64,000 bases of DNA from Hemiscyllium ocellatum (Eukaryota): NCBI RefSeq assembly GCF_020745735.1, contig NC_083405.1:53534345-53598344 (forward strand). Direction: 5' to 3'. This document shows, piece after piece, positions 710 to 50,399 of the stretch (the stretch's first letter is position 1; every line of letters starts with the position of its first letter). Position numbers and translations under genes: made by a program. Below the pieces are notes generated by a model that worked only from the letters and a program-made list of their open reading frames with translations, did no database searches and was not told the origin of the DNA.

Positions 710-999
710 TAGAACAAAAGGGTGTTCTTGCTGTCTCCTATTTGGATTAGTTAAATTTTGCATTTTAATTTTTCAGCAGAGATAGAAAAAAAAGGAATGG
801 CAATAATTAAAGGTATATTTAAAGCCATTAAAAAGCATTTGATTAAGTCGAGTCAGAAATAATGCGGAAATATGCTATAAACCACTGATAATTCAAAATA
901 AATACAGGAAGTTTGCAGGTAATTTTGAAATGTTTTTAGCAGCAACAGACTTGAACAATCCTATGTGGAAAAATTCAAAATGTTAATGATATCTAGAAA

Positions 1000-1256
1000 T
1001 TTGTTTTTAATTCACTCATGGGATGTGGGTGGTCACTGGCTAAGCTGTCTTCTTGAACCTCTGCAGTACATGTGCTGCAAGTTGACCTACAATGCCCTGA
1101 GGGAGGATTTTGACCCAGCGACAGTGAAGGAACTGCAATATATTTCCAAGTCAGGAAGGTGAGGGGAACTACACAGCAGTAGTCATGTGTTTGGAAGGTG
1201 CTGTCTAAGGATGTTTGGTGAATTTCTGCAGTACATCTTGTGGATAGTACACACTG
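1000..1256 (-). mobile_element. 3' fragment of the CR1/L2-group LINE (tRNA-headed family)
   Basis: attcactcatgggatgtggg...ttcttgaacc...caagtcagga matches the 3' ends at 7436, 20745, 23455 and 25560. Confidence 0.75.
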
Positions 1257-2320
1257 CGATCAAAGATTGTTTCTGTAAGTACCTGTATGAACTATGTTGT
1301 ATGTCCAACAAAGAAGGATGCATAGTTGTATTTGGTTAAATAATGAAATAGAAGAAAGAAAGGCAGCCAACAGTCCAAAAAATACTGATGAAAATTTAAT
1401 CAAGTTCACACTAAAGAAAGACAAAATTCCTTGAAGTTCTTTTCCCTTGATAAATATCCCAGGTCCTGAGAAAGCTTCATAGAATCATAATTTCTCTGAA
1501 TCTACAAATCCCACCAGATAAGGGCATAAATTGAGCCATTCTGAAATGCAGGTTTCTAAAAACACTACCAAACCGACTGCCCGATGCAGAATTCTCCTGG
1601 GTCTCTGTAACAAATGTAACCGTCTCCTTTAGCTTTCCCTATTCCCACCACTGAAGGCTTTTGCTGCCACAATATCTCTATGAAATGAAAGTAAGTAATT
1701 TTCAAGTTTTGTTTTATAAAATGTCTAAGTTTTGAACAGTGGTTGCATAACCAACACCACCAGGAAAGCTGATTGAAATACTACTGTATTGGAGAGGAAC
1801 AGCAATTGTGAAATCAGGTATTTCTTTGTGTATTTCCTGGGCAATAATGTAGTGGGGCAGATTGCCCATCTGTTATAGACCATCCAACACACCCTGAAAC
1901 ATGTCAATGGAATATAAGACCTGCATGTTCAACATCTGACAAGCTGTTCCCAATTACATTCCCAGAATTGAAGACACAAATTGGTAACCATGTTTTCCTC
2001 TTCTCCATCAACTCTGTCTTTATCTACTCCAGAGTGAACATGGTAGTATAGTTTCAGGAAACTGAATTTCGACCCTTGAAGACTTTTTTTAAACTGACGC
2101 CTGCAACTTCAAATCCTGTATTTTTACAACTTTCTAACAGCAAAGTGGTATTGCGCATTGCCTTATTCTTAGCAACAGTAATTTCTCCCAGTGATTGCAC
2201 AAGAGAGATATTGTTCATTTTTGACAGGTAAAATCTATTCAATGACCATCGGTGTTAGAATGATCTTGGTGTAACTAATTTGCACTCTGTGGTGTATAGA
2301 TGGTTACCTCAGCATGCTTA

Positions 2321-2671
<351 letters not shown>

Positions 2672-5099
2672 CTAGAACAAAAATGAACATCGCTAGGTCA
2701 TTATTATAATAACAACACCAGGAACTTTAATGCTCATTTTTCAACACAAGTCAAAATTAGAAATTCTTCATGACCAAAAATGCAAAAGTGAACATACACA
2801 GTACACCTTGAAGTAGAATAGCTCTCAAAAGCCCAACATGTCAAATTAGGATGTTATATTTGCTGTCAGAGATATTAAACCTGTCTTCACATTTTTGTCT
2901 TAAGATTTGTACAGAAATAGGACCAAAACAGATTGCACTGAAAGCCAAACTGTATCCATTTGTCTTACATTATAATGATATTTTACTGAAAACCACAAAC
3001 CAATGTTATTATACCTGATGGGATCTCAAATAAACACATGCTCAAAAAGTGCCTCAAATAATACAATCCCTTCAGATTACCGAATACTTCAAGACACTTC
3101 ATTTGAAATTAAATCTTGTCTTTTCCTTTGATCTGCTGGTTAATGTGTTCATCACTGGGGATACTATTGTAAATAACTCATCTACAAACTTAGGGCTTTA
3201 CTCTTTAGATACATTTATGACTACTAATTTATCACACTAAGGCCTTCAAAAGGTCTCAGATATGCACTTTATCATAAATGTTTAACCTCACGTAAAAGCT
3301 AAGTGATAAACTATACAGCTACTCTCAAAACTCAACATGATCCATACATGATCTATACAACAATTTCATAAGGAACCAGAGCAATATCACCATGACAATC
3401 AATATCATTCATAACACAGTAAGTTCCATTTGACACTGTTTAGGTAATATTAGAGGGTTTTCAATTTTATATATTTTCTTAAGGGAACTGTATACCATGG
3501 GATATGGTGATTAACTGCAGCAATTCAGTTTTGTTGCTGTAAAATGCTTATGAATCAATGAAGGAGATTTAGAAACCATTGTTGCCCAAACTGAAATATA
3601 ACTTAGTTACAAAACATCTCCTGAAAAGGAAGGCAGTTCGTACTGCAGACCCACAGCCTCCATCTCAGCTGTTATCCTTAAGAACTTTTGGTACCTCCTT
3701 GCTTGCAATACTCATTGAGAAGCAATTTTTTAGCATATATAAATATTAGCACAAACATTGTGTTGCATCTCATTCAAAGATGTTTGGATAAACCAAGTAC
3801 TATATTAAAATAAATTAAGACCTCCATTCAATCAAGGCCCGAATACCCAGTTAAGTGCTGCTAAATGAACTGGTGCCTTAAACACTCCACTAATAAAAGG
3901 ATATCTCCATTAGAAGAAAATAACTGAGCAAGTTATAAATCCATTCCTCCAATTCTGTTGGCACTGCCATCAACAGCAGCCAAAGTCAAACCATCACAGG
4001 CATTGCAATTTCCAGAATCAGCCCCAGAGGGCAGAAGTGGTTTATCATTTAAATGTAAACCATGTTTATCATTGGGGTAAAAACGCAACAAATCCCTTTG
4101 ATTAGAAAAACATGACAGAGTGGGAAGGGATGTGTAGTTACTCAAAATTGTTCAATATAGAGAGGGAGGTTGAGAAACTCTGATAGATAATGTATACTGT
4201 ACATAAGATATATAAATCTGGCTTGTCTCATTTTACTGTGTTAGCACAGGCTTAACATCTTAAATCATTCAAATTCATCAAAGCTGAAAAGGTAGAGGTT
4301 GTCATTAAAGTACATATATTGGCAAAACAAAATAATCCTTTCACAACTGGAGAATTTGCACCTCCCCTACTCCCTGCTCCCCCATTGCCTAGTAAAGGTT
4401 CCTGCATCAACTAATTTAAATAATATTTAATGTTATGAATATTGTAGTATACAGTATCAGACTGGAAGTACTAGGGAAGCCGCTTACAATACTTGGGTTG
4501 CTTTTGTTTACAACATAGAGTTGCTGTTGAGGTGATTTTCATCCGTTTCTTTTATTGTCCTTACAGTGATGGGTTGAGGGAAGGTTGGGCTGGGACACAC
4601 CAGAGCACATCTTCAATGTCTTACCACAACCAGTAAAATTTACCTGTCAGCCAACAGGGCAGGGAACACATAGGAAACAGTGGCCTGCCAACTGATAGCC
4701 ATTTTTCGAAGCATAAATTGTCCGTGCATCTCATTGGTTCCAAAAAGTGTTAGAAATACACAGTAAAAATAAGCAAAAATTCAGCAACAGCTTAATGTTG
4801 ACTGGAAGTAAGTACCAGTTGTTCAGTACAGCTGCAGTATCAACAGGCAATCTGACATTAGATAAGCAAAACTTCATACGTCTGGAATGATTGCAGAATG
4901 CATGCCCACTGCATCAAGTGCAGACAGTATAATGCGATTGGGGAAGCACTGCATCGTGCAAGTATCAAATCTCAATAGATACTCTTCAAGCAGAGCTTGT
5001 GTCCCCCAATGAAAGCTAAGGAAGCAGCCAAATAGACCATGACTGGACATTTTAAAGGAGCACAGCATGATCAAGCTACTCTAGGAAAAGGCTATGCGA

Positions 5100-6765: not shown

Positions 6766-8153
6766 GTTGGGCAGCAGCTATGCAGGGAGAACAAAGTTAA
6801 CATTTCAGGTAAATACTTTTGTTTTAAACATAAAAATTCTCAGCAACTGAGTATTTCCAATATTTTCTATTTCATTCCTTAATGATATCCTTGGCAGCTT
6901 TTTATGAAATGCCCCAGTTATTACATTCAGGAGCTACATTCAGCACTGCAATCATTCCTTGCGGAGTTTATCATCCCGAAGTCTCAAAATCTAGAAATGA
7001 CCAACTTCTGCAGAAATGTGCAAACAAGCCTCTAAGTATAATTCCAAGAACTTGACCTTTGTTAATTGTTTAATGCTACAGTATTGAACAAGAAATGTCA
7101 CTCAGTGAGACTCCAAGTACCTGAGGCAGCATTTACACTAATATTTGGTGTGCCTACAACTTCTCCTGCAACTACAGATAAACCAGTGACACTTGTTTCA
7201 CTGGGCAGCTGTGCTAATCAGAATGTGACACTTTAAACATTCACCATCACACTACTGAGAGGATCAGTGCAATTGGTTATTCAGCTTCATCAATGCAGCA
7301 AATACTCCTGATTGATCATGGGTTTGCTGCATAAGATAATGCGGTATCTCACTATGGACATTGGTCTTTGGACATACCTGAGGCTACCTTGCTTCACATC
7401 TCTTGGATCCCACTGACTGTGAACTTACAGATATGCTTTATTCATCCATGGGATGTGAGCATCATTGTCTGGTCCAGCTTTTATTGCCCATTCCTAGTTG
7501 CCATTGAGAAGCTGGTAGTAAGATGGTGCCTTTAACCACTGCAGCTCATGTGCTGTAAGTAGACCCACAATTCTGGTGGGAAGGGAGTTCAAGAATTTTG
7601 ATCCAAGGCCAATGATGGAATGGTGAGATATTTCCAAGTTAGGATGGGTAGTGACTTGAAGGTGAACTAGAAAATGATATTTTTCCCATGCATCTGCTGC
7701 CCTTGTCCTTCTAGCTGGAACTGGTCTCTTATTTGATAGGTGCTGTCTAAAAATATTTGGCAAATTTCTGTAGTGCATCTTGTAGATTTGATAGAGAAAG
7801 TGAATATTTCAGATGTAGTGCTAGTCAAGTGGTCTACTTTGTCCTGGATGGTGTCGAGCTTCTTGTGTGTGATAGATCTTCACTCATCCACCAGTGAGGA
7901 TTACTCTATCACATGCCTGACTTGTGCCTTAAAAATGGTGGACAGACTGTGGGGATTCACGACATTAATGTGTCACCACAGGATTTCTAGCCTGTGACCT
8001 GTGGCTGCGCCCACAGTATTTATATGGGTAGTCCAGTTCTGTTTCAGGATGTTGATAAGTGTGGGATTCACTGATGCTTTCACATATGAAGGAGTAATGA
8101 CTGGATTCATTTTTATTGCAGATGGTCATTGCCTGGCACTTGAGTGGAACAAA

Positions 8154-8475
8154 GGGGTGGCACAGTGGCTCAGTAGCACTGCTGCCTCACTGTGCCAGGG
8201 ACCCGGGTTCAATTCACGCCTCGGGAAACTGTCTGTGTGGAGTTTGCACATTCTCCCAGTGTCTGCATGGGTTTCTTCCGGGTGTTCCGTTTCCCTCCCA
8301 CAGTCCAAAGCTGTGCAGCTTAGGTGAATCGGCCATGGTAAATTGGCTGTAGTGTTAGCTGCATTAGTCAGGGTTAAATGTAGGAAAATGGTTCTGGGTG
8401 GATTGCTCTTCAGAGGGTCGGTGTGGACTTGTTGGGCTGAAGGGCCTCTTTCCACACTGTATGGAATCTAATCTA
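8154..8475 (+). mobile_element. HE1-type V-SINE nested in LINE
   Basis: Same head, V-domain and tail as 390-709. Confidence 0.9.
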
Positions 8476-9039
8476 CTTTCCATTTAACAACCCAAGCCTG
8501 CACAGTATTCGGGTCTTGCTGCATGACTGTTTCAGTATCTGAGGAATCATAAATGGCGCTCAATTGCATGCAAACATCTCCACTTCTGGCCTTATTATGC
8601 AAGGAAGGTCATTGATGAAGCAGCTGAAAACGGCTGGACCTCAGACACTGCAAAGACACTCTGCAGCTAAGATGACTGACCTGCAACAATCACAACCTTC
8701 TTCCTATGTGCCAGGTATGACTCTAACCAGTGGAAACTTTTTCCCTTATCCCATTAACTTGAAATCTGTAGTCACTCTCACCTCACTCTGGAACTCAGCT
8801 CTTTTGCCTATGCTTAGGTCAAGTTTGTAATGAGGCCAGTAGCTGAGCGGCCCTGGCAGAACCCAAACTGTGCCTGCTTTCTGATGCCATGTCTGAGCAG
8901 GTGCTGTTTGTTAGCGTTATTGATGACACCTTCCATCACTTTACTGATGAAGAATAGTAAACTGATTAGGTGATAATTGGCTGGTTTGGATTTGTCCTGC
9001 TTTGTGTATACAGTACATTCCTGGGCAATTTCCACATTG

Positions 9040-10126
9040 GAAGAAAGTGAGGAACTGCAGATGCTGGAGTACCAGAGTTGAAAAATGTGGTGCTGGAAAA
9101 ACACAGCAGGCCAAGCAGCACCCGAGGAGCAGGAGAATCGACGTTTTGGGTATAAGCCCTTCTTCAGAAATGAGGCTGGTGTGCCAAGCGGGCTGAGATA
9201 AAAGGTGGGGGGAGGGGCGCTGGGAATACGATAGGCGGAAGGGGGTGAGGGTGAGGGTGGTAGGCCGGAGAGGGGGTGGGGGCGGAGAGGTCGGGAAGAA
9301 GATTGCAGGTCAAGAGGGCAGTGCTGAATACAGGGGTTGGGACTGAGATAAGGTGGGGGGAGGGGAAATGAAAAAGCTGGAGAAATCTACATTCATCCCA
9401 TGTGGTTGGAGGGTTCCTAAGCGGAAGATGAGGCGCTCTTCCTCCAGGCGTCATGTGGCCAGGGTCTGGCGATGGAGGAGGCCAAGGACCTGCATGTCAT
9501 TGGCAGAGTGGGACAGGGAGTTAAAGATTTCAGCCACGGGGCGGTTGAATTGGTTGGTGCGGGTGTCCCAGAGATGGTCCCTGAAACGCTCCGCAAGTAG
9601 GCGGCCTGTCTCCCCAATGTAGAGGAGACCACATCAGGTGCAGCAGATACAGTAAATGATGTGTGTGGAGGTGCAGGTGAATTTGCGACGGATATAGAAG
9701 GATCCCATTGGGGCCTTGGAGGGAGGTGAGGGGGGAGGTGTGGGCGCAAGTTTTGCACTTCTTGCGGTTGCAGGAGAAGGTGCCGGGAGTGGAGGTTGGG
9801 TTGGTGGAGGGTGTGGACCTGACAAGGGTGTCGTGAAGGGAGTGGTCTCTCCTGCATGTTGATAGGGGTGGAGAGGGAAATATATCCCTGGTGGTGGGGT
9901 CTGTCTGGAGGTGGCGGAAAAGACGGAGGATGATACGATGTATCCGGAGGTTGGTGGGGTGGAAGGTGAGGATCAGTGGGGTTCTGTCCTGGTGGCGATT
10001 GGAGGGGCAGGTTCAAGGGCAGAGGTGCGGGAAGTGGAGGCGATGTGGTGGAGAGCGTCATCGACCACGTTGGAGGGGAAATTGCGGTCTTTGAAGAAGG
10101 AGGCCATTTGAGTTGTTCGGGAGTGG
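9040..10126 (-). mobile_element. Penelope-like element, 5'-truncated (GIY-YIG endonuclease plus terminal region)
   Basis: Peptides FTCTSTHIIYCICCT followed by GLLYIGETGR..AERFR.HL (GIY-YIG) and QMASFFKDRNFPSNVV. GC-rich. Flanked by aatttccaca(t/c)tg direct repeats at 9027-9039 and 10127-10139. Confidence 0.9.
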
Positions 10127-11996
10127 AATTTCCACACTGTCAGGTAGATTGCAGAATTGTAACTGTACTGGAAGAACTTGGCTAGGAGTGCAATAAGTTC
10201 CGGAGCACAAGTCTTCAAATGTTATTGCTAGAGTGTTGTCACGACCTTTGCCGTATCCATTGCCTCTAAGCATATATTGATATCACATGGAGTGAATTGA
10301 ATTGACTGAAGACCAGCATTTCTGATCTCGAGGAAACTGAGAAGTTTTATCCAGTCCATACTCTGTCTGAACATTGTTGTAGATTCTTCAGCCTTCTCTT
10401 TTGCGACGATATGTGGTCTCCCACGTCATTGCAAATGGGGATATTTGAGGAGCCTCCACTTCCTCCACTGACTTGTTTAATAGTCCACCAACAATCACAA
10501 CTGGATGTGGTAGGACAGTAGAGCATAGATCTGATCGGTTGTCTGTGGAATCACTTTGCTTTGTCTATCACAAGCTACTTATGCTGCCTGGCAAACATTC
10601 TGCTTTGTTGCTTCACTAAGTCAACAGTTTTTAAGTATGCCTGGTGCTGCTCCTAGCATGCTTTCCTGCACTCTCCATTGTCCCAGGGCTGATATCCCAG
10701 CTTGATGGTGATGGTAGAGTGGGGGATATGCCAAGGCATGAGATTGAAGATTATATTCATACAGTTCTGCTGCTGATGCCCACATTGCCTCATGGATGGC
10801 TAATCTTGCTGTGATGGATTTGTTTGAAGTCTATGCCATTGAGCATGTTGTTAGTACCAAACAATAGATGGAGGTTATACTCAATATTTAGATAGGGCTT
10901 CATCACCACAGGGTCTGTGTTCAATCTTACCAATATGGTGTGGACAGATGAATCTTTGGCAGACATATGGAGGACGAGTTCAGATACATTTTTCCCTCAT
11001 GTTGGTTTCCTTACCAGCTGCAGCAGACCCCAGTCTAACAACAATACCTTTAGCATTTGACTTAAATTATGAGTGCCCATCATTCTGTTAGACTACACCA
11101 GATCAGAATCACTTCCAGTATTGCAGTCAGGTTTGTGCAGCCTGAAGCTGGCCTTCTATGTGATGTTTACAGATCGTCAGCTCCTGCCCAGTGAGAACTG
11201 CAACTTTCTAAGTTCACTTGATGCTTACAGAAATACCTCCATGAATATGCCTTTCAACCATGGAGCTACTGTTCCTCTGACTCCAGTCAACTCTCTACCC
11301 CTCCCTATTGATTACCACTTTCAATGCCCACAGTGCGCACTGCCTAGATCAGGGTGGCAGATTGGCCTATAAATCTGGCACTGTGCTGGCAGCACTACCT
11401 CCTGTCTGCCAGTCATATTGACGGTCTTCCCCAGGTACCAAGTATTAATTGGCTAGATGGAATTGTTGCAATACTTGCACAGCCAGCCGTCTGTGTATGA
11501 CCTCATTGGGGTTTCCTGTCATCAGGCAAAAAGGATCTTTTTGTGTCTAATTTTTCATCCAGTAATCTGCTTAGCTGTTTTACAATGAAGGAATTTGACT
11601 GCTGTTTTAACCTAAATAGGTCTTTTTCCCTTTGGTTTGACAAGGAAGATGAGTAGATTTCTGGATGTATATCATCCAGATTTGGCTTATGTGCATTTGA
11701 AAACTTCAAAAGAAATGTGGAAGCCTGGACAAACAAGACTTATAATGTTATTGCTCTTACAATGTTGTTGATCTGTCAGATCCAAATCATTCCTGCAGTT
11801 GTAAGGTTTTAGACATCATCCTATATTTTGAGGAAAACAGACAGAGAAAAGGAACCAAATAATAGTTGGAAGCAAATTATTTGACAAAGACACAGCCAAG
11901 GATTTATTGTACAAGATAGCAATAAGAGATGACATATGGCATGACCTATCCACATCATTTGGTTGCCCAGAGGTAATCAAGTCAAGGTTTTCAGCT

Positions 11997-20744: not shown

Positions 20745-21040
20745 TTTTTACTTGTTCATGGAGAATGCGTACCCATGTCAGGCCAGTATTTATTGCCCAT
20801 CCCTAATTTGATCTGGAAAAGGTGGTGGTGAGTTGCCTTCTTGAAGCACCACAATCTGCTTCAGCCATAGATCCAGCCCACAGTGTTGCTCAGCAGTAAG
20901 TTCCAGAATTCTGACTCAACCAAACTAAAGTTACAGCGATACAATTCTAAGTCTAGAATGGTGTGGGGCTTGGAGTGGAACTTGGAAGTGGTGTTGTCCC
21001 AATGCAACTGCTGCCCTTGTCCTTCAAGGTTATCAGGTTT
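20745..21040 (-). mobile_element. 3' fragment of the CR1/L2-group LINE
   Basis: ggccagtatttattgcccatccctaatt...aaggtggtggtgagttgccttcttgaa. Confidence 0.8.
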
Positions 21041-22101
21041 GGCATAGTGTTACATGCATTATAAAAGTGAATGTATTTGCATTACTATAAAAATCATGGG
21101 ACTAAACATATGAGGAAAGTACAATGAGGAAAAACAAAAAAAAAAATTTAAAAAGGTTAAAGAGAAGCCAAAACAAAAAGACAATTTAAAAACTGCTTAT
21201 ACACTCTTTCCCAATTGAAGTCAGCATTTTTAACTTTTACCAGAGGTCTGTTTGCTGATACACGAGGGATACATGACTGCACTAATTTCTAAGCGCATCT
21301 TTGTTTTCTAAGTATTGATAGAAGATTGAAAGCTAGCATGGAAAAATCCACCAACCATAACACCCAAGCTACATGCAGAGGAAAATGTTCCGCATGGATG
21401 GTAAATCATTCATTAATTTGCTTACCTAGTAGTCTTCATGGAGAAAAGATTATGTCATGGTCACCCAAATAGATTGAATAAATGGTCATCGTCATGCGAT
21501 CAGTGCAATAACAAGCATCTTAAAAAACATTCATACTAATTAAAAAACAAAAAGGGAATGATGTAATCAAATTAATGATGTCACCACTGAGATTTAATTT
21601 TCCCAATAAGGTTCTAACAAGATCCAGGTCCCTGCGGAAAAACACAACCTCACAAGTGACTGAGTTAATCTGTGCCAAATATTCTCGTAACACTGCACTA
21701 TCTGGGTCTTTGAACTCATGCTATAAAATCATTGCCACTACTTAACCATCAACATTTCTAAGAGAAATGAAGATACCACCAAAGTATTAAGTGCATGCAT
21801 TCAAAACTATATAAACATGGCATTCATCACTAAAATAGTGAGATGTTTCGACCGTTGGATAACTCATCTTGCAAGCTCATAATACAACTGGAAAAAGTGG
21901 GTGAAGCATACAGCAATCAGTTGACAAAATATAACATGTGACTTGTGAAAATGAGTCTGAAGAAGGCTTCTTACTACAAAACATCGTCCTTCAAACAAAA
22001 GCATTCATGTGCATTTGCACATTTTCCTATTCTTTTTAGAATCATGGCTTTGGTTATATATGTTGTCATTTATTTGCTCTGAAGACTAGGCTTGCACTTA
22101 C

Positions 22102-23454: not shown

Positions 23455-23690
23455 TGGAATTTTATCCATTCTTGGAATGTGATTGTCACTGGCTAGGTCA
23501 ATTTATAATATTCATCCCTCATTTTCCCGAAGAAGGTGGTGGTGGTTAGTTGTCTTCTTGAATTGCTGTAGTCCCTGTGATGTGGGACATCCACAGTGCC
23601 TTTAGAGAGAGTTCCATGAGCTTGACTCACTAACAGTGGAAGAATAGAACTATAGCTCCAAGTCAGGAATAATCTATGGATTGTGGGGGG
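23455..23690 (-). mobile_element. 3' fragment of the CR1/L2-group LINE
   Basis: tttatccattcttggaatgtgattgtcactggctagg...gaaggtggtggtg...ccaagtcagga. Confidence 0.7.
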
Positions 23691-25559: not shown

Positions 25560-28345
25560 TTTTTAATGCAGTCACAGAAAATGGGTGTCACTGGCTAGCA
25601 TTTATTGGCCATTTCTAATTGCCGATCCCTGATTTCCCTCAAGAAAATAGCAATGAGTTGACTGCTTGAACTGCTGCAGTCCTTGGGGATGTAGGATCAC
25701 CCACAGTAATGATAGGGAGGGAGTTTCAGAGTTTTCACCCAGCAACACTGAAGAAAGACAATATACTCCAAGTCAGGATAGCAAGTGGCTTTGAGGGAAA
25801 CTTGCAGTTGATGTTGTTTCCATGCATCTGCAGCCTCCTTTTTGATAGTAGAGGTGGGAGGCTTGGAAAGCATTGCCTAAGGAGCATTGGTGAGTGGGTG
25901 CAATGCGCCTTGTCGATGATATACATTGCAACTCCTGTTCATTAGTGATGGAGGTACTGAAAAGTTAAAGGTGTTGGATGGAATGCCTATCAATTAGACT
26001 ATGTTGTCATTGATGGCAATATAGTTTCCTGAGAGTTGTTGGAGCTGTACTCATTCAAGTCCGTAGAGAGATTAATCTATCTCTCTCCTAATTTGTGCTG
26101 AGTAGATGGTGAACAGGCTTCAAACAGTCAGGATGCAAGTTCCTTGCCATTGAATTCTCAGTTTGTGATCTGCTCTGGTAATCACAGTATGTATATGGCT
26201 TGTCACTTCAGTTCTTAGTTAATGATAGCCCCTGAGTTATTAATAGTGGAGGATTCAGTGATGGTGAATGTTAACAAACAAAGATTGGATTCTCTCTTGA
26301 TGGAAATGGTCAATGTCTGGCTTTGTAAGGTACAAATGTTAATTGCCACTTATCAGTCCAAGGCACAATGTTGTTCAGGTCTTACTGTATTTGGATACAG
26401 ACTGCTTCAGTATCTGAGGAATCACAATGATGCAAAACATCATGTGGTCATCAGTGGTTATTGCCATTCTGACTTTAGGATGGAGTGGATGTCATCGATG
26501 AAGCAGTTGAAGATGATTGGGTTTAGGATGCTGCCTTAAGAACACCTGCAGTGATGTCCTGCTGCTAAAATGATTGACTTCCAACAATTATATCTATCTC
26601 CCTTTGTACTATGTATGACTGCAATCAGCAGACAGTAAACCCTTCCCTGATTCCAAATAATTGTAGTTTTAGTAGGGATCCTTGATGTAAAATGTAGTCT
26701 TGATGTCAATGGCAGTCATCCCTTACTTCCCTTTTGGAATTCAGCTCTTTTGTCCATGTTGGTACCATTGAGGTCAGAAACTAAGTGAGCCTGTGGAGCT
26801 CAAACTGAGCATCAGTGAACAGGTTATTGGTGAATAATTGCCAATAGATAACACTGTTGACATCACCTTAGTGATGACAAAGTTGACTGATAGGGCAGTA
26901 ATTGGCCCACTTGGATTTGTCCTGCTTTTTGTACATAGGTCGGACCTGGGCACTTTGTTCACATATCACAACTGTTTTGTAAAAGTTTAGATGGGGCTAC
27001 AGCTAGTTCTGGGACATAAGCCTTCAATTCAGAATGTTGGCAGGACCCATAGCCCTTGCAGTATCCAGCACCTTCAGCCATATCTTGACACACAGTGTAT
27101 CGAGTTGCTTGAAGGCTGGTATTAGATGTCGGGAACCTCAGGAGGAGGCAGAGATGGTTTGTACACTTGACATTCCTACCTAACAGAGGCTGTAAATGCG
27201 CCAGCCTCACCTTTTGCACTTCTGTGCCAGGCTGCCTTATCATTGAGGATAAGTAATTTGTAGAGTCTCCTCCTTCAGTGAATTATTTGATTGTCCACCA
27301 CCATTCACAACCAATGTGACAAGACTTCAAAGCTTAAGTCAGATTTGTTTATCACTTAGCTGCATTTATCATTTGTTGCTTATGCTATTTATCAAACTAG
27401 TAGTCATGTGTTATAGCTTCATGAGGATGACACCTCATGTTTAGGTATGTCCGGTGTTGCTCCTGTACTGTCCATTGAACCAAGTCCCTGGTTTGAGGTA
27501 GAGTCGAAAATATGCCAGGTCATGAGGCAACAGATTGCGGTTGAATACAATTTGGCTATTGCTAACAGTCAACAGTGCCTCATGGATGCAGAGCTGAGTT
27601 GCTAGATTTGGTCAAAATCCATTTCATTTGGCATGGTGATGATGCTACACATCACAAAGAAGGGCAGAAGGTGGTAATTAGAAAGTGGTTTATTTGTCCA
27701 TGTTCAAACTCTTACAATGGGTCTGAAGTCAAATATATGACTCCCAGTGCAACCCCTTCCTGACTCTGCTGCCATCTCTGGTAAGTTTGTATTCCCATAG
27801 GACAGGACATACGCAAGGACATCAATGGGAATGGTGGTGTTTGGGACATTGTCTGTCAAGTGTCATTTCACATGAACTTCAGGTCCAGATTATGTCAGGC
27901 TATTGCTTGACTAGACTGTGGGAGAGCTCTCTAGACTTCTCTCTCCAAAGCACTCTAAGCCCCAAGATACAAGAGAGAAGATTTTGCAGGATCGACAGGG
28001 CTGCTTGTGGTTCATCTAATGGTGTTCCTTTTGCCAGACTCTGCAGCAGCTAAATACAACAGAGTGATTTACTGGGTTACTTTAGACAGCGTTTAGACAT
28101 TAACCAGTTGCTGTGGATCTGGAAGCTAGACCAGATGAGGATGATATGTTTTACTTCTCTAAAGGATATCTGAATCAAATGGGTTTTACAAGAATTGGTT
28201 TCATTAGACTGGCTTTTAATTCCAGATATATTAATTGACTTCAACTTTCATCATGTCTTCATTGTGGGACTCATACTAATGTCCACCAAAGCAGTAGTCT
28301 GGGTCTCTGGATCACAGTCCAGTGACACTACTACCTCATCACTTC
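25560..28345 (-). mobile_element. Near end-to-end decayed CR1/L2-group LINE with tRNA-like 5' head
   Basis: Reading the minus strand: SINE-like head 28345-28100, linker, endonuclease start ELSHSLVKQ*PDII (about 27930-27888), RT region (aggacaaatccaagtgggccaattactgccctatcagtc), 3' tail at 25560-25620. Confidence 0.8.
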
Positions 28346-38812: not shown

Positions 38813-38969
38813 CTAAATGCCCAGGCCACTCTTCCAAATGGAAATAGCTGGATATTCCACAATTGTAATTTGTTTATATAAAAGGCATAAAAGTAGAATT
38901 ATGGTCAAGCCAAAATAATTTAACTTTTTGATAGTTTCAATAAAGATGAATAGAAGGACAATAGAAAGA

Positions 38970-39140
38970 GGGAGGTGATGGCTTTGTGGGTACTTTTTAT
39001 TGTTGGACTGTTAATGCAGAGACCCAGGTAATGTTCTAGGATTCTGGATTAGAATCCCACAATGGCAGCTAGTGGAATTTGAATGCAATAAAAAAAAAGT
39101 CTGGAATTAAGAGTCTAATGATAACCACTGTTGATTGTTA
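38970..39140 (+). mobile_element. 5' part of the tRNA-headed SINE/LINE family
   Basis: ggaggtgatggc...gttaatgcagagacccagg...gaatcccacaatggcagctagtggaatttgaat...ctggaattaagagtctaatgat matches 49537 onward. Confidence 0.8.
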
Positions 39141-40792
39141 GCATACATGCTAGCTCTTTGCAAGAGTAATTCACCTAGCTACTGCTCTCTGGCCTTTCTT
39201 CATAACCCTTTAGAATTTCCTTTTCAGATAATGAAAAATGCAAGGTTAGGTTGACTCTATTAATGCACACATGCAGACATCAGACTCCTGATGCAAACTC
39301 AATAGATATCTCAACTGAAAAGTCAGCAAGAAAACTGAAGCAATTAAGTTTGATTCAACAGTAAGACTTTATTACCCCCAGTGCTCAATAGCATATAGTT
39401 AAAGCACAATTTTTCAAACCTTCTATCCTTTACATCAATAAACATCTTTACTTGGTTCAAGATCAGAAAGGCATGCAATATATTACTAGGTCTCAGAAAT
39501 GTCACTCTCTAGATAGAAAATGCACTTCCAACCATCTATTCCCATTTCAGAAAAGCACTTTATTTCAGCTTGGTTTCCACCCTCATCAACTGAAATTTCC
39601 AACGTAAGATACAAAGAAATCCAAAGCCTACAGTTTTCCATTTGCTCTGACTAACAGTAAAATAAATACACATTAGTCCATCTATAAACATTTGACTGAT
39701 TACAGAGAAACTAATTCTTAAAAATAACAATTTAGACTAATTTTCAATACACCAGATAAAATTGTGACATCTGTAAGTATTAAATCAGCCTTTAACAGTA
39801 ATTAATGCAATAACAGACCCACACTGGGTATACAATAGAAATAGGATAGATGACATAGTACAAACAGCAATAGCTTAACATAATACAACTAATTTAATCA
39901 GCAGGATTCAAAACATAATGCTCAGTTCCCAAGAGCCACTCTGAGTGGTTCCAGTTTAATTGAAATCTAATACATTATTTTTGAGCAGATGCCATGTTAG
40001 AAGCGACCACTGAAGCACAAAGAAATTAAAAATACATTTATTGGGGGTGGAAGAATTGAGGCAGAACAGTTTGATAAATTCAGAGAGTTAACCTAAGCTT
40101 GCTGAATCTAGATTACTGCAGCATTAGTCAAGACATAGTAAATTTAAGCTGTTGACTTATGACAGTACAATTCCTCAAGTTTTTCTTTGCTTGTATTAAT
40201 AATAAGCTAGCCAGATCAAATTCATGTGACAACAGTGTCTACAGCAGGTGTCTTATGCTGTACTTATGCTTATACACCATCAGGAAAAACGAAGGGCCAC
40301 AATTACATGAATTCTGCTCCTGTCCTGCAAATTGTGACTTCAGTCTACTTCAGAGAAGGAGAACAGCAGTGTTCCTTGCATGTTCTAACTTGCAGGAAAC
40401 ATATTCGTATCTACAGTTTACTGACCACAGCAGAGGATCACAATACTGAGAGAAGGCTAACTCTATATCTCGAGCTATTCTGGCCAGGGAGATACTGAAA
40501 GAGGTTGTGTGACCTTCAACGGGGAAAGACAACTGAGATTGAGCACAGGAAAATGTCTGTTTCTTAGTTTTGAATGTAACTAATAACCAGTTATTTGGAG
40601 TCCAAAATAAGCAATAGGTAAATAACTGGATTGTGCATCAATTTCACTGTTCTGGGAGAAATTTTAAGTTAAGACATTATTTTAACAATTTCAACTAGCG
40701 AAGTTTATTAATAGCATTACTCTGCAGCTAAGAATAGTCAGTTGTTAAACATATCATACAATAACAACTATTTACATATAGCTTTTAATGTA

Positions 40793-41011: not shown

Positions 41012-41790
41012 TAAAAAAAAATCTGAGATGTACTAGGCCACAGGCTGAGAAGAGAACAAGTTGTGTCAGTGGGCATGTGAGATTACAGTTATGGGCAGCA
41101 GCTGGTGACCATGGAGTTGAAAGCAGCTAAGTTTGCTAGATGTGTTGGAAACATTCCTGCTTCTCCTAGTCGAACAAACAAACTTATGGAATTGGCCTTT
41201 CTCACCTCATTTCATCTGCTATGTTTCCAAGGATGAGTTAAAATGAAGAAGTGTTTATATATGTTGAAGCTTCCTAACAGTGAATGGTTTCTCCATCCTC
41301 ATCCCATTTTCAACAAAACAGGAAATAGACAGACTTGTTTACTGGATTGGGTTTGAATGCTTTACAAGTTTTAGATTCGCACCCAAGTCTAGCCCACCAA
41401 TCCTTCAGAGTTAAAATTACACACCCAACCCCTCTAACAAAATTACTTGAATGTTTGGAATTACTATTTAATTGATCCACCCTGAATGGTTATGAAATAC
41501 ATACTTCAGAGACAAACCTTGCAGGGGAACTCTCCAAGGACTTTGACAGCATCATGTCTGCTCAATATTAATATTTGTAAAGAATGTAATCATTTTGAAA
41601 TTTTACAGAATGCTTTACTGAATTCACTTTCAGGAAATGCAGATAACATGTACAAATATTCAAGGTGACCTTTATACCCAATAACATGCTTCTTTACCCA
41701 CAATATGAGACAACACCACAAATCTGGATCAGGAAAACCTTCAAATTCTATAAGACCAATGTAGCAGACACACGCAACCATGTATACATA

Positions 41791-42760
41791 GTGAGGAGAT
41801 GGCCAAGGTGCAATGTTTCTGAACAAGACAGACAGACTTCCAGATAACATTTTGGGAACCCTGGGTGTGATCCCACCATGGCAGATGGTGGAATTTGAAA
41901 TCAATAAAATCTGGAATTCAAAGTCTAATGACGAATATAATGACGATTATTAGAAAAATCTGGTTCACTAATGGCCTTTAGGGAATGAAAAACTGCAATC
42001 CATATCTGGTCTGGCCTACATGTGACTCCAGACCAGAACATTGTGGTTGACCCTAAACAGAAATCAGGAGTGGTCTAGCAAACAGTCAGTTGTATCTAGT
42101 TGCTACAAAATCTCAAAAAAAAAACAAATGAAACCAGATGAATAATCTGGCATTGGCAAAGGTACCAGAAATGACAACAACAAACCCAGCCCTGTCAGTC
42201 CTGCAAAGGTCTCTTCATTAACATCTGGGGGCTTGTGCCAAAATGGGAAGATTTGTCTTGTAGACAAGTTAAGCAACAGCCTGACATAGTCATACTCACG
42301 GAATCATTCATCACAATTTCCTAGACAACCTCATCACCATCCCAGAGTATGTCTTGTCTCACAGTTAGCACATGTGGAGAACAGTGATATACATTTGGGA
42401 GGGAGTTGCCTTGGGAGTATTCAACATGACTCCAGAAACTATGAAGTCTCATGGTGTCAGGTCAAACATGGGCAGCTGAAACACTGGTATCTGCCCAGAT
42501 ATGTCCAATCTGGCCATTTACTGTCCTGTCAGTGCCTCCTCCCCTCGGCCCCTACACGACTCTTGATCGTCAGTAAAGTATTATGAAATATCAACAATAG
42601 TGTTATTAGTCAGCACTTGCTTGGCAATAACGTGCTCATTGATGTTCAGTTTGTATTTCACCAGGGCCACTCAGTTCCAGAGCTCATTATAGCGTTGGTT
42701 AGAACATAGACAAAAGTGATGATAGCCAGGGGTGAGGTGAGAGTGACTGCATCAAGGCCA
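41791..42760 (+). mobile_element. 5' portion of the tRNA-headed LINE (head, endonuclease N-terminus, RT fragment)
   Basis: Head homologous to SINE 49537-49820; 42220-42309 translates NIWGLVPKWEDLSCRQVKQQPDIVILTESF; 42600-42750 gives QHLLGNNVLIDVQFVFHQGHSVPELI. Confidence 0.85.
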
Positions 42761-43423
42761 CAATTGTCTGAGAGTATATGCATGGCTATTTTCTGATTGA
42801 AACCAGCTAATCCACAGTTTGGGAAGGTTTGAAGAAAACACAATACAAAAGGTAACACAGAAAACAGATGAAAAGAAAAAGGACAATAAGATGACAGAAG
42901 TTAATTTTGTCCAGAATTTTTGGATCTTTGAGACATAGGGTTCCTGAAATATTTTGGGTTGAAAGGCAAGAAATGACTAAGAACATCCCGATCAATTACA
43001 TTTCATTTGAAAATTGTGTTTTGTAGAAATGGAGACGACACTTCTATGTTCTTCTGTTAAAGATACAGTGATACAGTAGAAAGTGGAGTAGCTGTTTTTA
43101 TGGTGCTAGATTTGAAATACAGCAGAGGACTAAAGTACCATAACAAAAATCATTTTAGTGTTCTAGACAATCACTCAAGAAAAGTTAAGTCCCTTATTTT
43201 GTTGTGATAACTCTTCCCAGTCACTTTTAAATTGAGGTTCCATCTCATTTTGTAAACTAATGCAGTTTTTTTTATCTTCATGCAAACTCACCTATGACAA
43301 CGTTCATTAAGATCATGTTTTAAGTTATCGATTTTTTTTCTGCACACTGGATGCTCCAGCAATAGGTTTTCAACTTGCTTTAAAGCTTGCAGCAATCTGC
43401 ATCAGCCATCTCCTTTACTCATG

Positions 43424-49000: not shown

Positions 49001-49536
49001 GAGTCAACTTTAAACATCTGGAGCACCACTCCTGCACAGAAGTGTCTGCAACCTTTACTGCACAATAAGTCAGTTGGATGAGAAGATGCAAGATTCACTG
49101 GCCTTTGTTTTGACTCCTGATGAAGCAAACCAATTCAGGTAATTGTCTCATTATATATAATATGGGTAATCTGTTATTACTCTTGCCATGAGAGAAGGTA
49201 TTTTCACTTTATGCAATTATGTGAAGACAAAATACCTAAAATCACTCTCTTGATATGTAAAATGTTATGAGTCAGCAGTTACTTTAGCTTCAATTTTGGA
49301 CCCTCTCCATTGCTATATTGGCCTTTAATTTTTTTTCAGGTAGAATTGATTAATAACGCATTTCTTCTTAATCAGTCTTCCCTCCCATTTAAGCTAGATA
49401 CATTAGTTAGCAGCTTCTTATTTCTCTCACAGTAGTGTTTACTGGTCCAGGTACTTGAGTTGCCACAATTTTCTTTCCTGCTAAGAAAGCTTGCTTATAT
49501 AGTGTGACGATGTTATGGGTGTCACTGGGTCACCAT

Positions 49537-49882
49537 GGTGAGATGATGGCCTACTGGTATTGTCCAGAGTTAATCCAGAGACGTAGATATTGTTCTGGGG
49601 ATACAGGTTCTAATCCAGCCACAGAAGATGATGGAATTTGAAATCAATTATTAAAACTATGGAATTATGAGTCTAATGATGACCAAGTCGATCGTTGTCC
49701 ATTGTTAGAAAAAACCCATCTGATTCACTAATGTCTGTTAAGGAAGGAAACAGGCATTCTTACCTGGTCTAGCCTATATCTGACTCCAGACCCACAGAAA
49801 TGTGGCTGACTCTTAACTAGGGCTTATGGATGAGCAATAAGTGCTGGACTAGCCAGCAATGCCCTCATCCCATGACTGAATT
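49537..49882 (+). mobile_element. Full-length tRNA-derived SINE: LINE head plus LINE tail
   Basis: A box tggcctactgg, B box ggttctaatcc, body shared with 41791-42056, and last ~60 nt shared with the LINE 3' tails. Confidence 0.85.
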
Positions 49883-50399
49883 TATATATATTATATACAT
49901 ATTCATCTTGTAACAGTTCAAAAGGATAATGAGAAAAGTTTTCTCATATTGATAAAAATAATGAGAATGCCTGAAAAGTTGGTATTTCAACTAATCGATA
50001 ACAGAAGTTAATGACTCTTATACATCTAAGAAAATAGCAATAATTGCTCTTACTCAAAATAAAGCATCAGACAAAATTAATCCCAAAAATCTGCAAAGGA
50101 TTAGTCACTGTACTTATTTTTATTACAGAATTGAAGTAAAGTAATTGTATTTATAGAATGCTTTTCAAATTTCAAACAAATTTAAATAAGGATTTCATAC
50201 AAAGTGCTGCACACCTCACTGGAGTCACAGGCCAATCGTTTGCAAGATCTGAGGCCGCAATGGCAACAATCGAGAGAAAACTCCAGCCAAGAAATGATTT
50301 TTATTTCCCTGAAAGTTTGGAAACTGGCAGAGTTCTTAGCTACTTTGATTGGCTAACCTGGCACTTACCTTGGGCTTCACTATAGAAATAAATGTACCA

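What the first reader, a model, noticed from the sequence alone, without database searches (positions are those of the whole stretch)
41791..42760. LINE that starts with a tRNA-like Pol III head and appears to lack ORF1
Seen: a ~270-nt SINE-type head with A- and B-box-like positions (41791-42056) is followed after only ~165 nt by the first motifs of an APE endonuclease (NIWGL...PDIVILTES, 42220-42309) and then RT sequence of the same family as 7436-11080. Known: CR1/L2 LINEs usually have a Pol II 5' UTR and an ORF1, whereas tRNA-derived heads on autonomous LINEs are described mainly for Ingi/Vingi-type elements. Inference: this is a single-ORF CR1/L2-group LINE that captured a tRNA or SINE head as its 5' end. 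That raises the question of how a multi-kb coding RNA is transcribed and translated. It may already be catalogued in repeat libraries.
Basis: partly seen in the sequence, partly recalled or inferred. Interest (0 to 1): 0.72.

Follow-up and report, generated by a model that had tools for sequence, protein, structure and literature searches.

The report
Shark LINE with SINE-type front end
This is a dead copy of a shark jumping gene (a LINE) whose whole untranslated front end is the tRNA-like head and body of the local SINE, so SINE and LINE share both ends; it bears on where conserved SINE bodies come from and on whether a protein-coding element can be driven by a tRNA-type promoter.

Summary
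Observation confirmed. Window 41791-42776 is a dead, rearranged copy of a ~3.2-kb single-ORF endonuclease/reverse-transcriptase LINE. Its whole 5'UTR (~430 nt) is the tRNA-related head plus Deu-type body of the local SINE.

All four copies that reach the endonuclease start (two in this window, two in the shark Heptranchias perlo) run upstream through the same ~160-nt linker into the same body. Three reach the head and one is truncated inside the body. Upstream flanks are unrelated, and there is no ORF1.

Contigs from two studies of the window's species, and from two related species, bridge the body-linker-endonuclease junction.

The SINE equals the LINE's 5' ~290-307 nt joined to its stop codon plus 54-nt 3'UTR.

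In H. perlo every T4+ run on the LINE sense strand is private to one copy (0.35/kb, against 3.5/kb in other LINE families nearby). This fits Pol III transcription but does not prove it. No conserved in-frame AUG was found.

I found no paper describing this layout. Kojima 2018 lists only RTE and Vingi LINEs as donors of SINE bodies. This scan has noted the same layout at eight or more other places in this genome. The direction (SINE from LINE, or capture) and the polymerase remain open.

The parts
41791..41885 (+). Copy A: tRNA-related head (A-box-like 41798-41808, B-box-like 41863-41873), decayed
   Evidence: Aligns with the heads of SINE copies and of LINE copies B and L003 (A1, A3). No tRNA call by ARAGORN or Rfam. 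Read consensus of the family gives a good B box across 41870 (table 7).
41886..41955 (+). Copy A: A/T-rich spacer between head and conserved core
   Evidence: Alignment A3, poorly conserved columns 120-200.
41956..42056 (+). Copy A: conserved Deu-type core shared with the SINE
   Evidence: Best-conserved block of A3. 70-79% identity to H. perlo LINE and SINE copies. Summed contig depth ~10,000-20,000 times the flanks.
42057..42219 (+). Copy A: distal 5'UTR ('linker'). In the loci sampled, found past its first ~35 nt only in LINE copies
   Evidence: Conserved between window copies A and B and H. perlo L002 and L003 (A3; nhmmer). Single-copy contigs 42007/42009-42291 bridge it in four runs of three species (table 8).
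42220..42481 (+). Copy A: APE endonuclease N-terminal remnant (NIWGL...PDIVILTES), with stop and frameshifts
   Evidence: Translation. Matches reference positions up to 558 of the H. perlo LINE, whose endonuclease hits PF14529 and PF03372.
42482..42494 (.). Copy A: internal deletion junction (~1.18 kb of the element missing)
   Evidence: nhmmer: reference 22-558 maps to 41958-42480 and 1736-1978 to 42495-42776.
42495..42776 (+). Copy A: RT remnant (N-terminal RT motifs). The element ends here, without its 3' ~1.1 kb
   Evidence: nhmmer E 7e-23, blastn to copy C, translation.
25584..28345 (-). Copy B: independent near-full copy with the same order (head, core, linker, EN, RT, 3' tail). Internal ~350-nt deletion
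   Evidence: Sequence, alignment A1, nhmmer reference 15-588 and 935-3072.
49513..49885 (+). Free SINE: head plus core, joined after the core to the LINE's last ~60 nt
   Evidence: Sequence, alignments, 3' ends.
7455..11052 (-). Copy C: same LINE family, 5'-truncated inside the endonuclease, with two later insertions
   Evidence: nhmmer reference 744-3075 in three pieces, translation.
38967..39141 (+). Head-only fragment of the SINE/LINE 5' end
   Evidence: nhmmer E 4e-15, sequence.
20777..21035 (-). 3'-tail fragment of the LINE family. Further tail fragments at 23485-23686 and 1019-1262, both minus strand
   Evidence: nhmmer, 3' ends.

Best explanation
Copy A is a dead, internally deleted and 3'-truncated copy of a shark LINE family.

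Shown:
- The family is ~3.2 kb long. It has a ~431-nt 5'UTR, one ORF of ~917 codons (APE endonuclease plus reverse transcriptase) and a 54-nt 3'UTR ending in ...ATGAACGAAT(A)n.
- The 5'UTR is collinear with the local tRNA-headed, Deu-type SINE (SacSINE1-like): head, A/T-rich spacer, conserved core, then a distal part.
- The SINE consists only of the LINE's first ~290-307 nt joined to its stop codon and 3'UTR.

Inferred:
- LINE and SINE are one system sharing both ends. The shared 3' hairpin tail lets the LINE's protein copy both RNAs. The shared head acts as an internal promoter, so both RNAs start at the same nucleotide.
- The SINE subfamilies are most simply ORF-less (bipartite) derivatives of the LINE, made more than once.

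Working hypothesis, about even odds: the head drives Pol III transcription through the whole 3.2 kb, which selection has kept free of T4 terminators. Translation would then start without a conserved AUG.
For: 1. Junction. All 4 copies that reach the EN start continue into the same linker and core: window A and B, and H. perlo L002 9100-12189 and L003 8855-11189. Three reach the head, and L002 is 5'-truncated inside the core as expected for one retrotransposed unit. About 25 other copies are truncated further 3'.
2. The 1.5-kb upstream flanks of the three head-bearing copies share nothing. The 5'UTR has stops in all frames.
3. Single-copy contigs bridge core, linker and EN in two studies of the window's species and in two related species.
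4. The H. perlo ORF pieces hit PF14529, PF03372 and PF00078. One stop-free piece of 526 aa covers most of the EN and the start of the RT.
5. The SINE tail equals the stop codon plus the whole 3'UTR, and the junction differs among four SINE copies.
6. LINE and SINE copies begin within 1-2 nt of each other in both species (A3).
7. In H. perlo the LINE cores are 93-94% identical to one SINE copy, above the LINE-LINE value of 88%.
8. T4+ runs number 5 in 14.2 kb, and each is private to one copy. Other LINE families in the same loci have 95 in 27.1 kb. A4+ runs are not depleted beyond composition.
9. A conserved predicted hairpin lies in the tail.
Against: - Only four 5'-complete copies were seen. 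Two of the loci were picked because their gene models extended towards the endonuclease.
- No intact full-length ORF of the family exists in the protein collections searched, so autonomy is inferred from domains.
- tRNA models score the head weakly (Rfam 14.8 bits, E 3.7, below the cut-off of 29; ARAGORN none).
- T4 avoidance is modest against composition-based nulls (P ~0.02-0.1). The control LINE families are of unknown age and are more A/T-rich.
- The 3'UTR holds AATAAA, which also fits Pol II.
- Pol III is not known to make 3-kb coding RNAs in nature (my knowledge).
- The Deu core is far older than sharks and occurs with other heads and tails (PMC4824008). This favours capture of a SINE by the LINE over SINE-from-LINE.
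Confidence: 0.72

Rival explanations
1. Passenger head, Pol II element. A SINE RNA or copy was fused once to the 5' end of an L2/CR1-type LINE, by template switching or by recombination. The chimera became the master copy. The LINE is transcribed by Pol II from signals in the body or linker, and only the SINE uses the tRNA-type promoter.
For: - The Deu core is ancient and combines with several heads and tails in other animals (PMC4824008; PMC7245038), so it need not originate from this LINE.
- AATAAA is present in the 3'UTR.
- Exapted Deu elements act as enhancers (cited in PMC5786205).
- LINEs are normally Pol II transcripts (PMC5786205).
Against: - The head has been kept at the very 5' end in two shark lineages, and LINE and SINE copies start at the same base. 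A Pol II start would have to coincide with that base.
- T4 runs are tenfold rarer than in neighbouring LINE families.
- No SINE tail remains between body and linker, as a simple end-to-end switch onto a complete SINE RNA would leave.
Confidence: 0.25
2. Chance juxtaposition. A SINE happened to insert just upstream of a 5'-truncated LINE at this locus, or the assembly joined the two.
For: SINE cores are extremely abundant in this genome (depth table), so nested and adjacent insertions are common.
Against: - The same linker and junction occur in 4 of 4 copies from two species.
- No SINE tail or A-run lies between core and linker.
- Contigs of four runs bridge the junction at single-copy depth.
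Confidence: 0.01
3. Larger element. The SINE-like stretch is an internal spacer of a longer LINE that has a 5'UTR and ORF1 further upstream, lost from the copies seen.
For: CR1-type LINEs usually have an ORF1 (my knowledge). Few 5'-complete copies were sampled.
Against: - Three copies end at the same base as the SINE, and their upstream DNA is unrelated.
- One copy is truncated inside the core.
- No shared ORF lies upstream.
Confidence: 0.02

Closest known systems
SacSINE1 / DeuSINE superfamily with its L2-type partner (Nishihara 2006; Luchetti 2017, PMC5499810)
   Same: A cartilaginous-fish SINE with a tRNA-related head, a Deu body, and a 3' tail homologous to the 3' end of an L2 LINE (L2-2_CM). 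The SINE copies here have that build and share their tail with the LINE.
   Different: The literature reports only tail homology between the SINE and the LINE. Here the LINE also carries the SINE's head and body as its 5'UTR. I could not align to the published SacSINE1, Deu or L2-2_CM consensus sequences because they were not available as text.
SINEs whose bodies derive from LINE 5' parts; bipartite non-autonomous LINEs (Kojima 2018, PMC5786205; Bov-tA/Bov-B; hagfish SINE2-9/10_EBu, PMC7245038)
   Same: The SINE is made of the 5'UTR part plus the 3'UTR of its partner LINE. The model is that ORF-less LINE derivatives seed SINE bodies.
   Different: In that survey only RTE and Vingi LINEs were donors, and the small-RNA head sits on the SINE only. 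Here the LINE is of the CR1/L2 group, the autonomous-type element itself carries the tRNA-related head, and the body is a conserved superfamily domain (Deu) whose origin is listed there as unknown.
Single-ORF L2 LINEs with stringent 3'-tail recognition (UnaL2, ZfL2-2; my knowledge, not checked here)
   Same: A compact element with one EN+RT ORF, no ORF1, and a conserved 3' stem-loop tail shared with a partner SINE.
   Different: Those elements are not reported to begin with a tRNA-derived head or a SINE body.
R2 and other LINEs made from non-Pol II transcripts (HDV-like ribozyme processing and AUG-independent initiation; cited in PMC5786205, otherwise my knowledge)
   Same: A coding LINE RNA that may lack a cap and a conserved AUG start.
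   Different: R2 is co-transcribed with rRNA and cut out by a ribozyme. No ribozyme was found here (Rfam). The proposed driver is an internal tRNA-type promoter.

Membership tests
APE-type non-LTR retrotransposon (LINE), CR1/L2 group | APE endonuclease N-terminal to a reverse transcriptase in one ORF | tested here: met
   H. perlo copy L002: PF14529 (1.2e-13) and PF03372 (1.1e-05) on the 526-aa piece, PF00078 (2.7e-19) on the next piece. Window copy A keeps the EN N-terminus and an RT piece.
APE-type non-LTR retrotransposon (LINE), CR1/L2 group | Common 3' end with variable 5' truncation among copies | tested here: met
   About 25 copies end at the same ...ATGAACGAAT(A)n and start at scattered reference positions.
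APE-type non-LTR retrotransposon (LINE), CR1/L2 group | RT phylogeny placing it inside the L2 or the CR1 clade | not tested
   No clade-labelled reference RTs were at hand. The only link is the literature statement that the SacSINE1 tail matches L2-2_CM.
CR1 clade in the strict sense | ORF1 upstream of ORF2 | tested here: not met
   The 5'UTR is ~431 nt with stops in all three frames. Flanks upstream of the head are unrelated.
DeuSINE / SacSINE1 (for the head and body) | tRNA-derived head with A and B boxes | tested here: inconclusive
   ARAGORN found none. Rfam tRNA scored 14.8 bits, E 3.7, on an H. perlo SINE head. An A-box-like motif lies 8 nt from the start in L003, and a B box appears in the read consensus.
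DeuSINE / SacSINE1 (for the head and body) | Body homologous to the published Deu-domain consensus | not testable with these tools
   No reference consensus was available. The assignment rests on my recollection of the core motif and on the match in taxon and architecture to SacSINE1.
DeuSINE / SacSINE1 (for the head and body) | 3' tail shared with an L2-type LINE | tested here: met
   SINE tails equal the stop codon plus 3'UTR of this LINE in both species.
SINE built from a bipartite LINE derivative (Kojima 2018 model) | SINE body collinear with the LINE 5'UTR, and SINE tail with the LINE 3'UTR | tested here: met
   A3 alignment. The SINEs hold no sequence absent from the LINE, and the junctions differ between SINE copies.
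SINE built from a bipartite LINE derivative (Kojima 2018 model) | Head present on the SINE only, added to a headless LINE derivative | tested here: not met
   The three 5'-complete LINE copies carry the head themselves.
Pol III type-2 transcription unit | No T4+ terminator inside the transcribed region | tested here: met
   All 5 T4+ runs in 14.2 kb of H. perlo copies are private, so the ancestor had none in ~3.1 kb. The rate is 0.35/kb against 3.51/kb in other LINE families. Composition-based nulls give P ~0.02-0.1.
Pol III type-2 transcription unit | Transcripts made by Pol III starting at the head | not testable with these tools
   No RNA run held the stretch. Only contigs were available, and they cannot show RNA ends.

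The most novel reading that the evidence does not exclude
[quoted passage not shown] In addition, the long vertebrate Deu-domain (330 bp) is simply the 5'UTR of this L2-like LINE lineage. DeuSINEs, including the ones exapted as vertebrate enhancers, would then be ORF-less descendants of a LINE.
Probability: 0.22. Interest if true: 0.88.

Novelty: new variant of a known kind. Interest (0 to 1): 0.7.

Why it matters
The origin of the conserved 'bodies' of SINE superfamilies (CORE, V, Deu, Meta) is a long-standing open question. The one systematic survey found LINE 5' parts in SINE bodies only for RTE and Vingi, and left Deu unexplained (PMC5786205).

A CR1/L2-group LINE whose 5'UTR is the head plus Deu-type body of its partner SINE gives that question a concrete object to test:
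- It links a SINE superfamily domain to a LINE UTR.
- It shows SINE and LINE sharing both termini and the same first base.
- It offers a natural case in which a 3-kb coding retroelement may depend on a tRNA-type promoter.

It also matters for annotation. Repeat libraries that stop the LINE consensus at the endonuclease will split these elements into 'SINE + LINE'. Several shark gene models already contain pieces of this LINE.

Tried and rejected
- tRNA detection: ARAGORN on the window and on six loci found nothing. Rfam on copy A and on L003 gave no tRNA hit, and only a sub-threshold hit on one H. perlo SINE.
- My first blastn self-search missed copy B because it is too diverged.
- Word search with a 68-aa RT piece returned one whale-shark fragment. 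The exhaustive representative search with that fragment found only short shark fragments and distant full-length relatives (amphioxus, moth, metagenomes), so no intact shark ORF2.
- Whale-shark models have no DNA on record. Heterodontus and Cetorhinus loci could not be fetched because the files are too large.
- An alignment of decayed EN fragments on distant backbones (A2) was too poor to use as a query.
- A metagenome scan for a 25-nt EN-start pattern found nothing.
- The conserved ATG inside the Deu core as ORF start: it is out of frame with the endonuclease in both H. perlo copies, and L002 has an early stop. An in-frame ATG exists in L002 only, followed by a stop, and an ATG in copy A sits in a different frame. 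Neither is conserved. The start codon is left open.
- Mononucleotide, Markov-1 and codon-order shuffles give only weak significance for T4 avoidance. The comparison with other LINE families is stronger but is confounded by their age and composition.
- Published SacSINE1, Deu and L2-2_CM sequences could not be obtained as text.
- I built no consensus and repaired no frame. Copies were only compared.

Full report
**The observation**

It has these parts, in order:
- From 41791, a ~95-nt head with A-box-like (41798-41808) and B-box-like (41863-41873) motifs.
- An A/T-rich spacer.
- A well-conserved core (41956-42056).
- A 163-nt linker (42057-42219).
- The endonuclease N-terminus NIWGL...PDIVILTES (42220-42306).
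- Further endonuclease sequence to ~42481.
- After a deletion junction, an RT piece at 42495-42776.

ARAGORN finds no tRNA in the window, and Rfam gives no tRNA hit on this decayed head. The head's tRNA ancestry therefore cannot be shown from this copy alone.

**Copies in the window**

A profile of the 5' region finds four head-bearing copies:
- Copy A.
- Copy B on the minus strand (28345-25584). A note of this scan pointed me to it after my blastn had missed it.
- A free SINE at 49513-49885.
- A head fragment at 38967-39141.

Copy B has the same order as copy A: head, core, linker, endonuclease, RT, 3' tail (A1). The SINE shares head and core, then jumps to the LINE's last ~60 nt.

**A second species**

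Protein searches found no intact shark ORF2 of this family, only fragments in whale-shark and Heptranchias perlo gene models. Through those models I fetched six H. perlo loci, 216 kb in all.

H. perlo copies are much better kept, at ~90-95% identity to each other. One has a 526-aa stop-free piece covering most of the endonuclease and the start of the RT. The pieces hit PF14529, PF03372 and PF00078.

In L003 the LINE starts with the head at 8855 and runs through core and linker into the endonuclease. In L002 it starts inside the core at ~9100 and runs 3.09 kb to the 3' end. All seven window copies are far more decayed than any H. perlo copy, so the window comes from another shark.

**Census**

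About 29 copies of this LINE family lie in 280 kb. Only four reach the endonuclease start, and all four continue into the same linker and core. Three reach the head, and one is truncated within the core. No copy has another 5' sequence.

The 1.5-kb upstream flanks of the three head-bearing copies share no similarity. The ~431-nt 5'UTR has stops in all frames. The head is therefore the element's 5' end, and there is no ORF1.

L002 and L003 were chosen because their gene models reached towards the endonuclease, not because of any head.

**Independent reads**

Contigs of two studies of the window's species cover 42007/42009-42291 without a difference. Contigs of two related species cover 42009-42291 with 10-12 differences. 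All of these are at single-copy depth. The junction is therefore not an assembly artefact, and the insertion predates the split of those species.

Summed contig depth over the core is ~25-50 times that over the endonuclease and RT parts. This fits many more SINE than LINE copies in that genome, though the tool warns that depth is not a copy number.

**Anatomy of the family**

- The ORF ends ...KGN-stop. The 3'UTR is 54 nt, holds AATAAA and a predicted hairpin, and ends ...ATGAACGAAT followed in most copies by a short A-run.
- The SINE tail begins at or a few bases before the LINE's stop codon and runs to the end of the 3'UTR.
- The SINE's 5' part stops at different points (reference positions ~290-307) in different copies, and it is joined to slightly different tail positions.
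- The SINEs therefore contain nothing that the LINE lacks.
- In H. perlo one SINE copy is 93-94% identical to the LINE cores, more than the two LINE copies are to each other.
- LINE and SINE copies begin within 1-2 nt of each other in both species.

**Transcription and translation: inference only**

In 14.2 kb of H. perlo copies there are five T4+ runs on the sense strand. Each is private to one copy, so the ancestor had none in ~3.1 kb. Nulls and controls:
- Composition-based nulls expect 2.2-4 runs (P ~0.02-0.1).
- Other LINE families in the same loci have 3.51 runs per kb, against 0.35 here.
- A4+ runs follow composition.

This fits selection against Pol III terminators, but the controls are of unknown age. 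No in-frame AUG is conserved between the head and the endonuclease, and the conserved ATG of the core is out of frame. No RNA run held the stretch.

**What is known**

- Luchetti 2017 describes SacSINE1 in sharks, chimaera and coelacanth as a tRNA head plus Deu body plus a tail homologous to L2-2_CM. It notes only the tail homology with the LINE.
- Kojima 2018 found LINE 5' parts in SINE bodies only for RTE and Vingi. It lists Deu among bodies of unknown origin, and proposes that ORF-less LINE derivatives seed SINE bodies.
- Nishihara 2016 gives the vertebrate Deu-domain as 330 bp. That is about the length of this 5'UTR downstream of the head, so the 'linker' may be distal Deu. I could not test this.
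- Searches for a description of a head-bearing LINE found none. Repbase and Dfam could not be consulted.
- This scan has noted the same layout at eight or more other places of this genome.

**Verdict**

The SINE-LINE relation is best read as one system sharing both UTRs. The direction of descent, the polymerase and the start codon are open.

Noticed in passing
window 9047-10126 (minus strand), inside LINE copy C: A ~1.08-kb insertion interrupts copy C. One stop-free piece (9454-9633) has a weak GIY-YIG hit (PF01541, E 0.049, below cut-off), suggesting a Penelope-like element.
   Followed up: partly
window 8141-8454 (minus strand), inside LINE copy C: A second ~315-nt insertion in copy C. It looks like a different tRNA-derived SINE family, judged by eye from its translation and not tested.
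   Followed up: no
window 41500-43000: Two related species (coded organisms B and C) hold the orthologous locus at ~95-96% identity, including copy A. Organism C has a 16-nt deletion at 41631 and a 17-nt insertion behind 42491.
   Followed up: partly
L001-L006 (H. perlo) versus window: The SINE:LINE balance differs. In 216 kb of H. perlo, about 21 LINE fragments but only 3 SINEs. In the window's species, contig depth over the core is 25-50 times that over the LINE ORF.
   Followed up: partly
L003 9039-9284; L002 homologous region: The conserved ATG of the core opens a 60-codon frame in L003 that ends exactly at the endonuclease motif, one base out of frame. It is cut short by a stop in L002, so it is probably not coding.
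   Followed up: partly
Proteins P0223, P0028, P0181, P0216 (NCBI shark gene models): Annotated host genes carry exons made of this LINE, which is likely annotation contamination. Examples: aldo-keto reductase-like, CSL4 isoform X1, MDFI-domain isoform X2, DMBT1-like.
   Followed up: no
L002 12175-12200: This LINE copy ends in ...GAAT followed by a run of nine T instead of the usual A-run. Directly downstream (12508 onward) another LINE family begins with an M-initiated endonuclease.
   Followed up: no
L001 about 21745-21755 (minus strand): One H. perlo SINE copy has an 8-T run in the A/T-rich spacer that the other copies lack. If that copy were transcribed by Pol III it would terminate there.
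   Followed up: no
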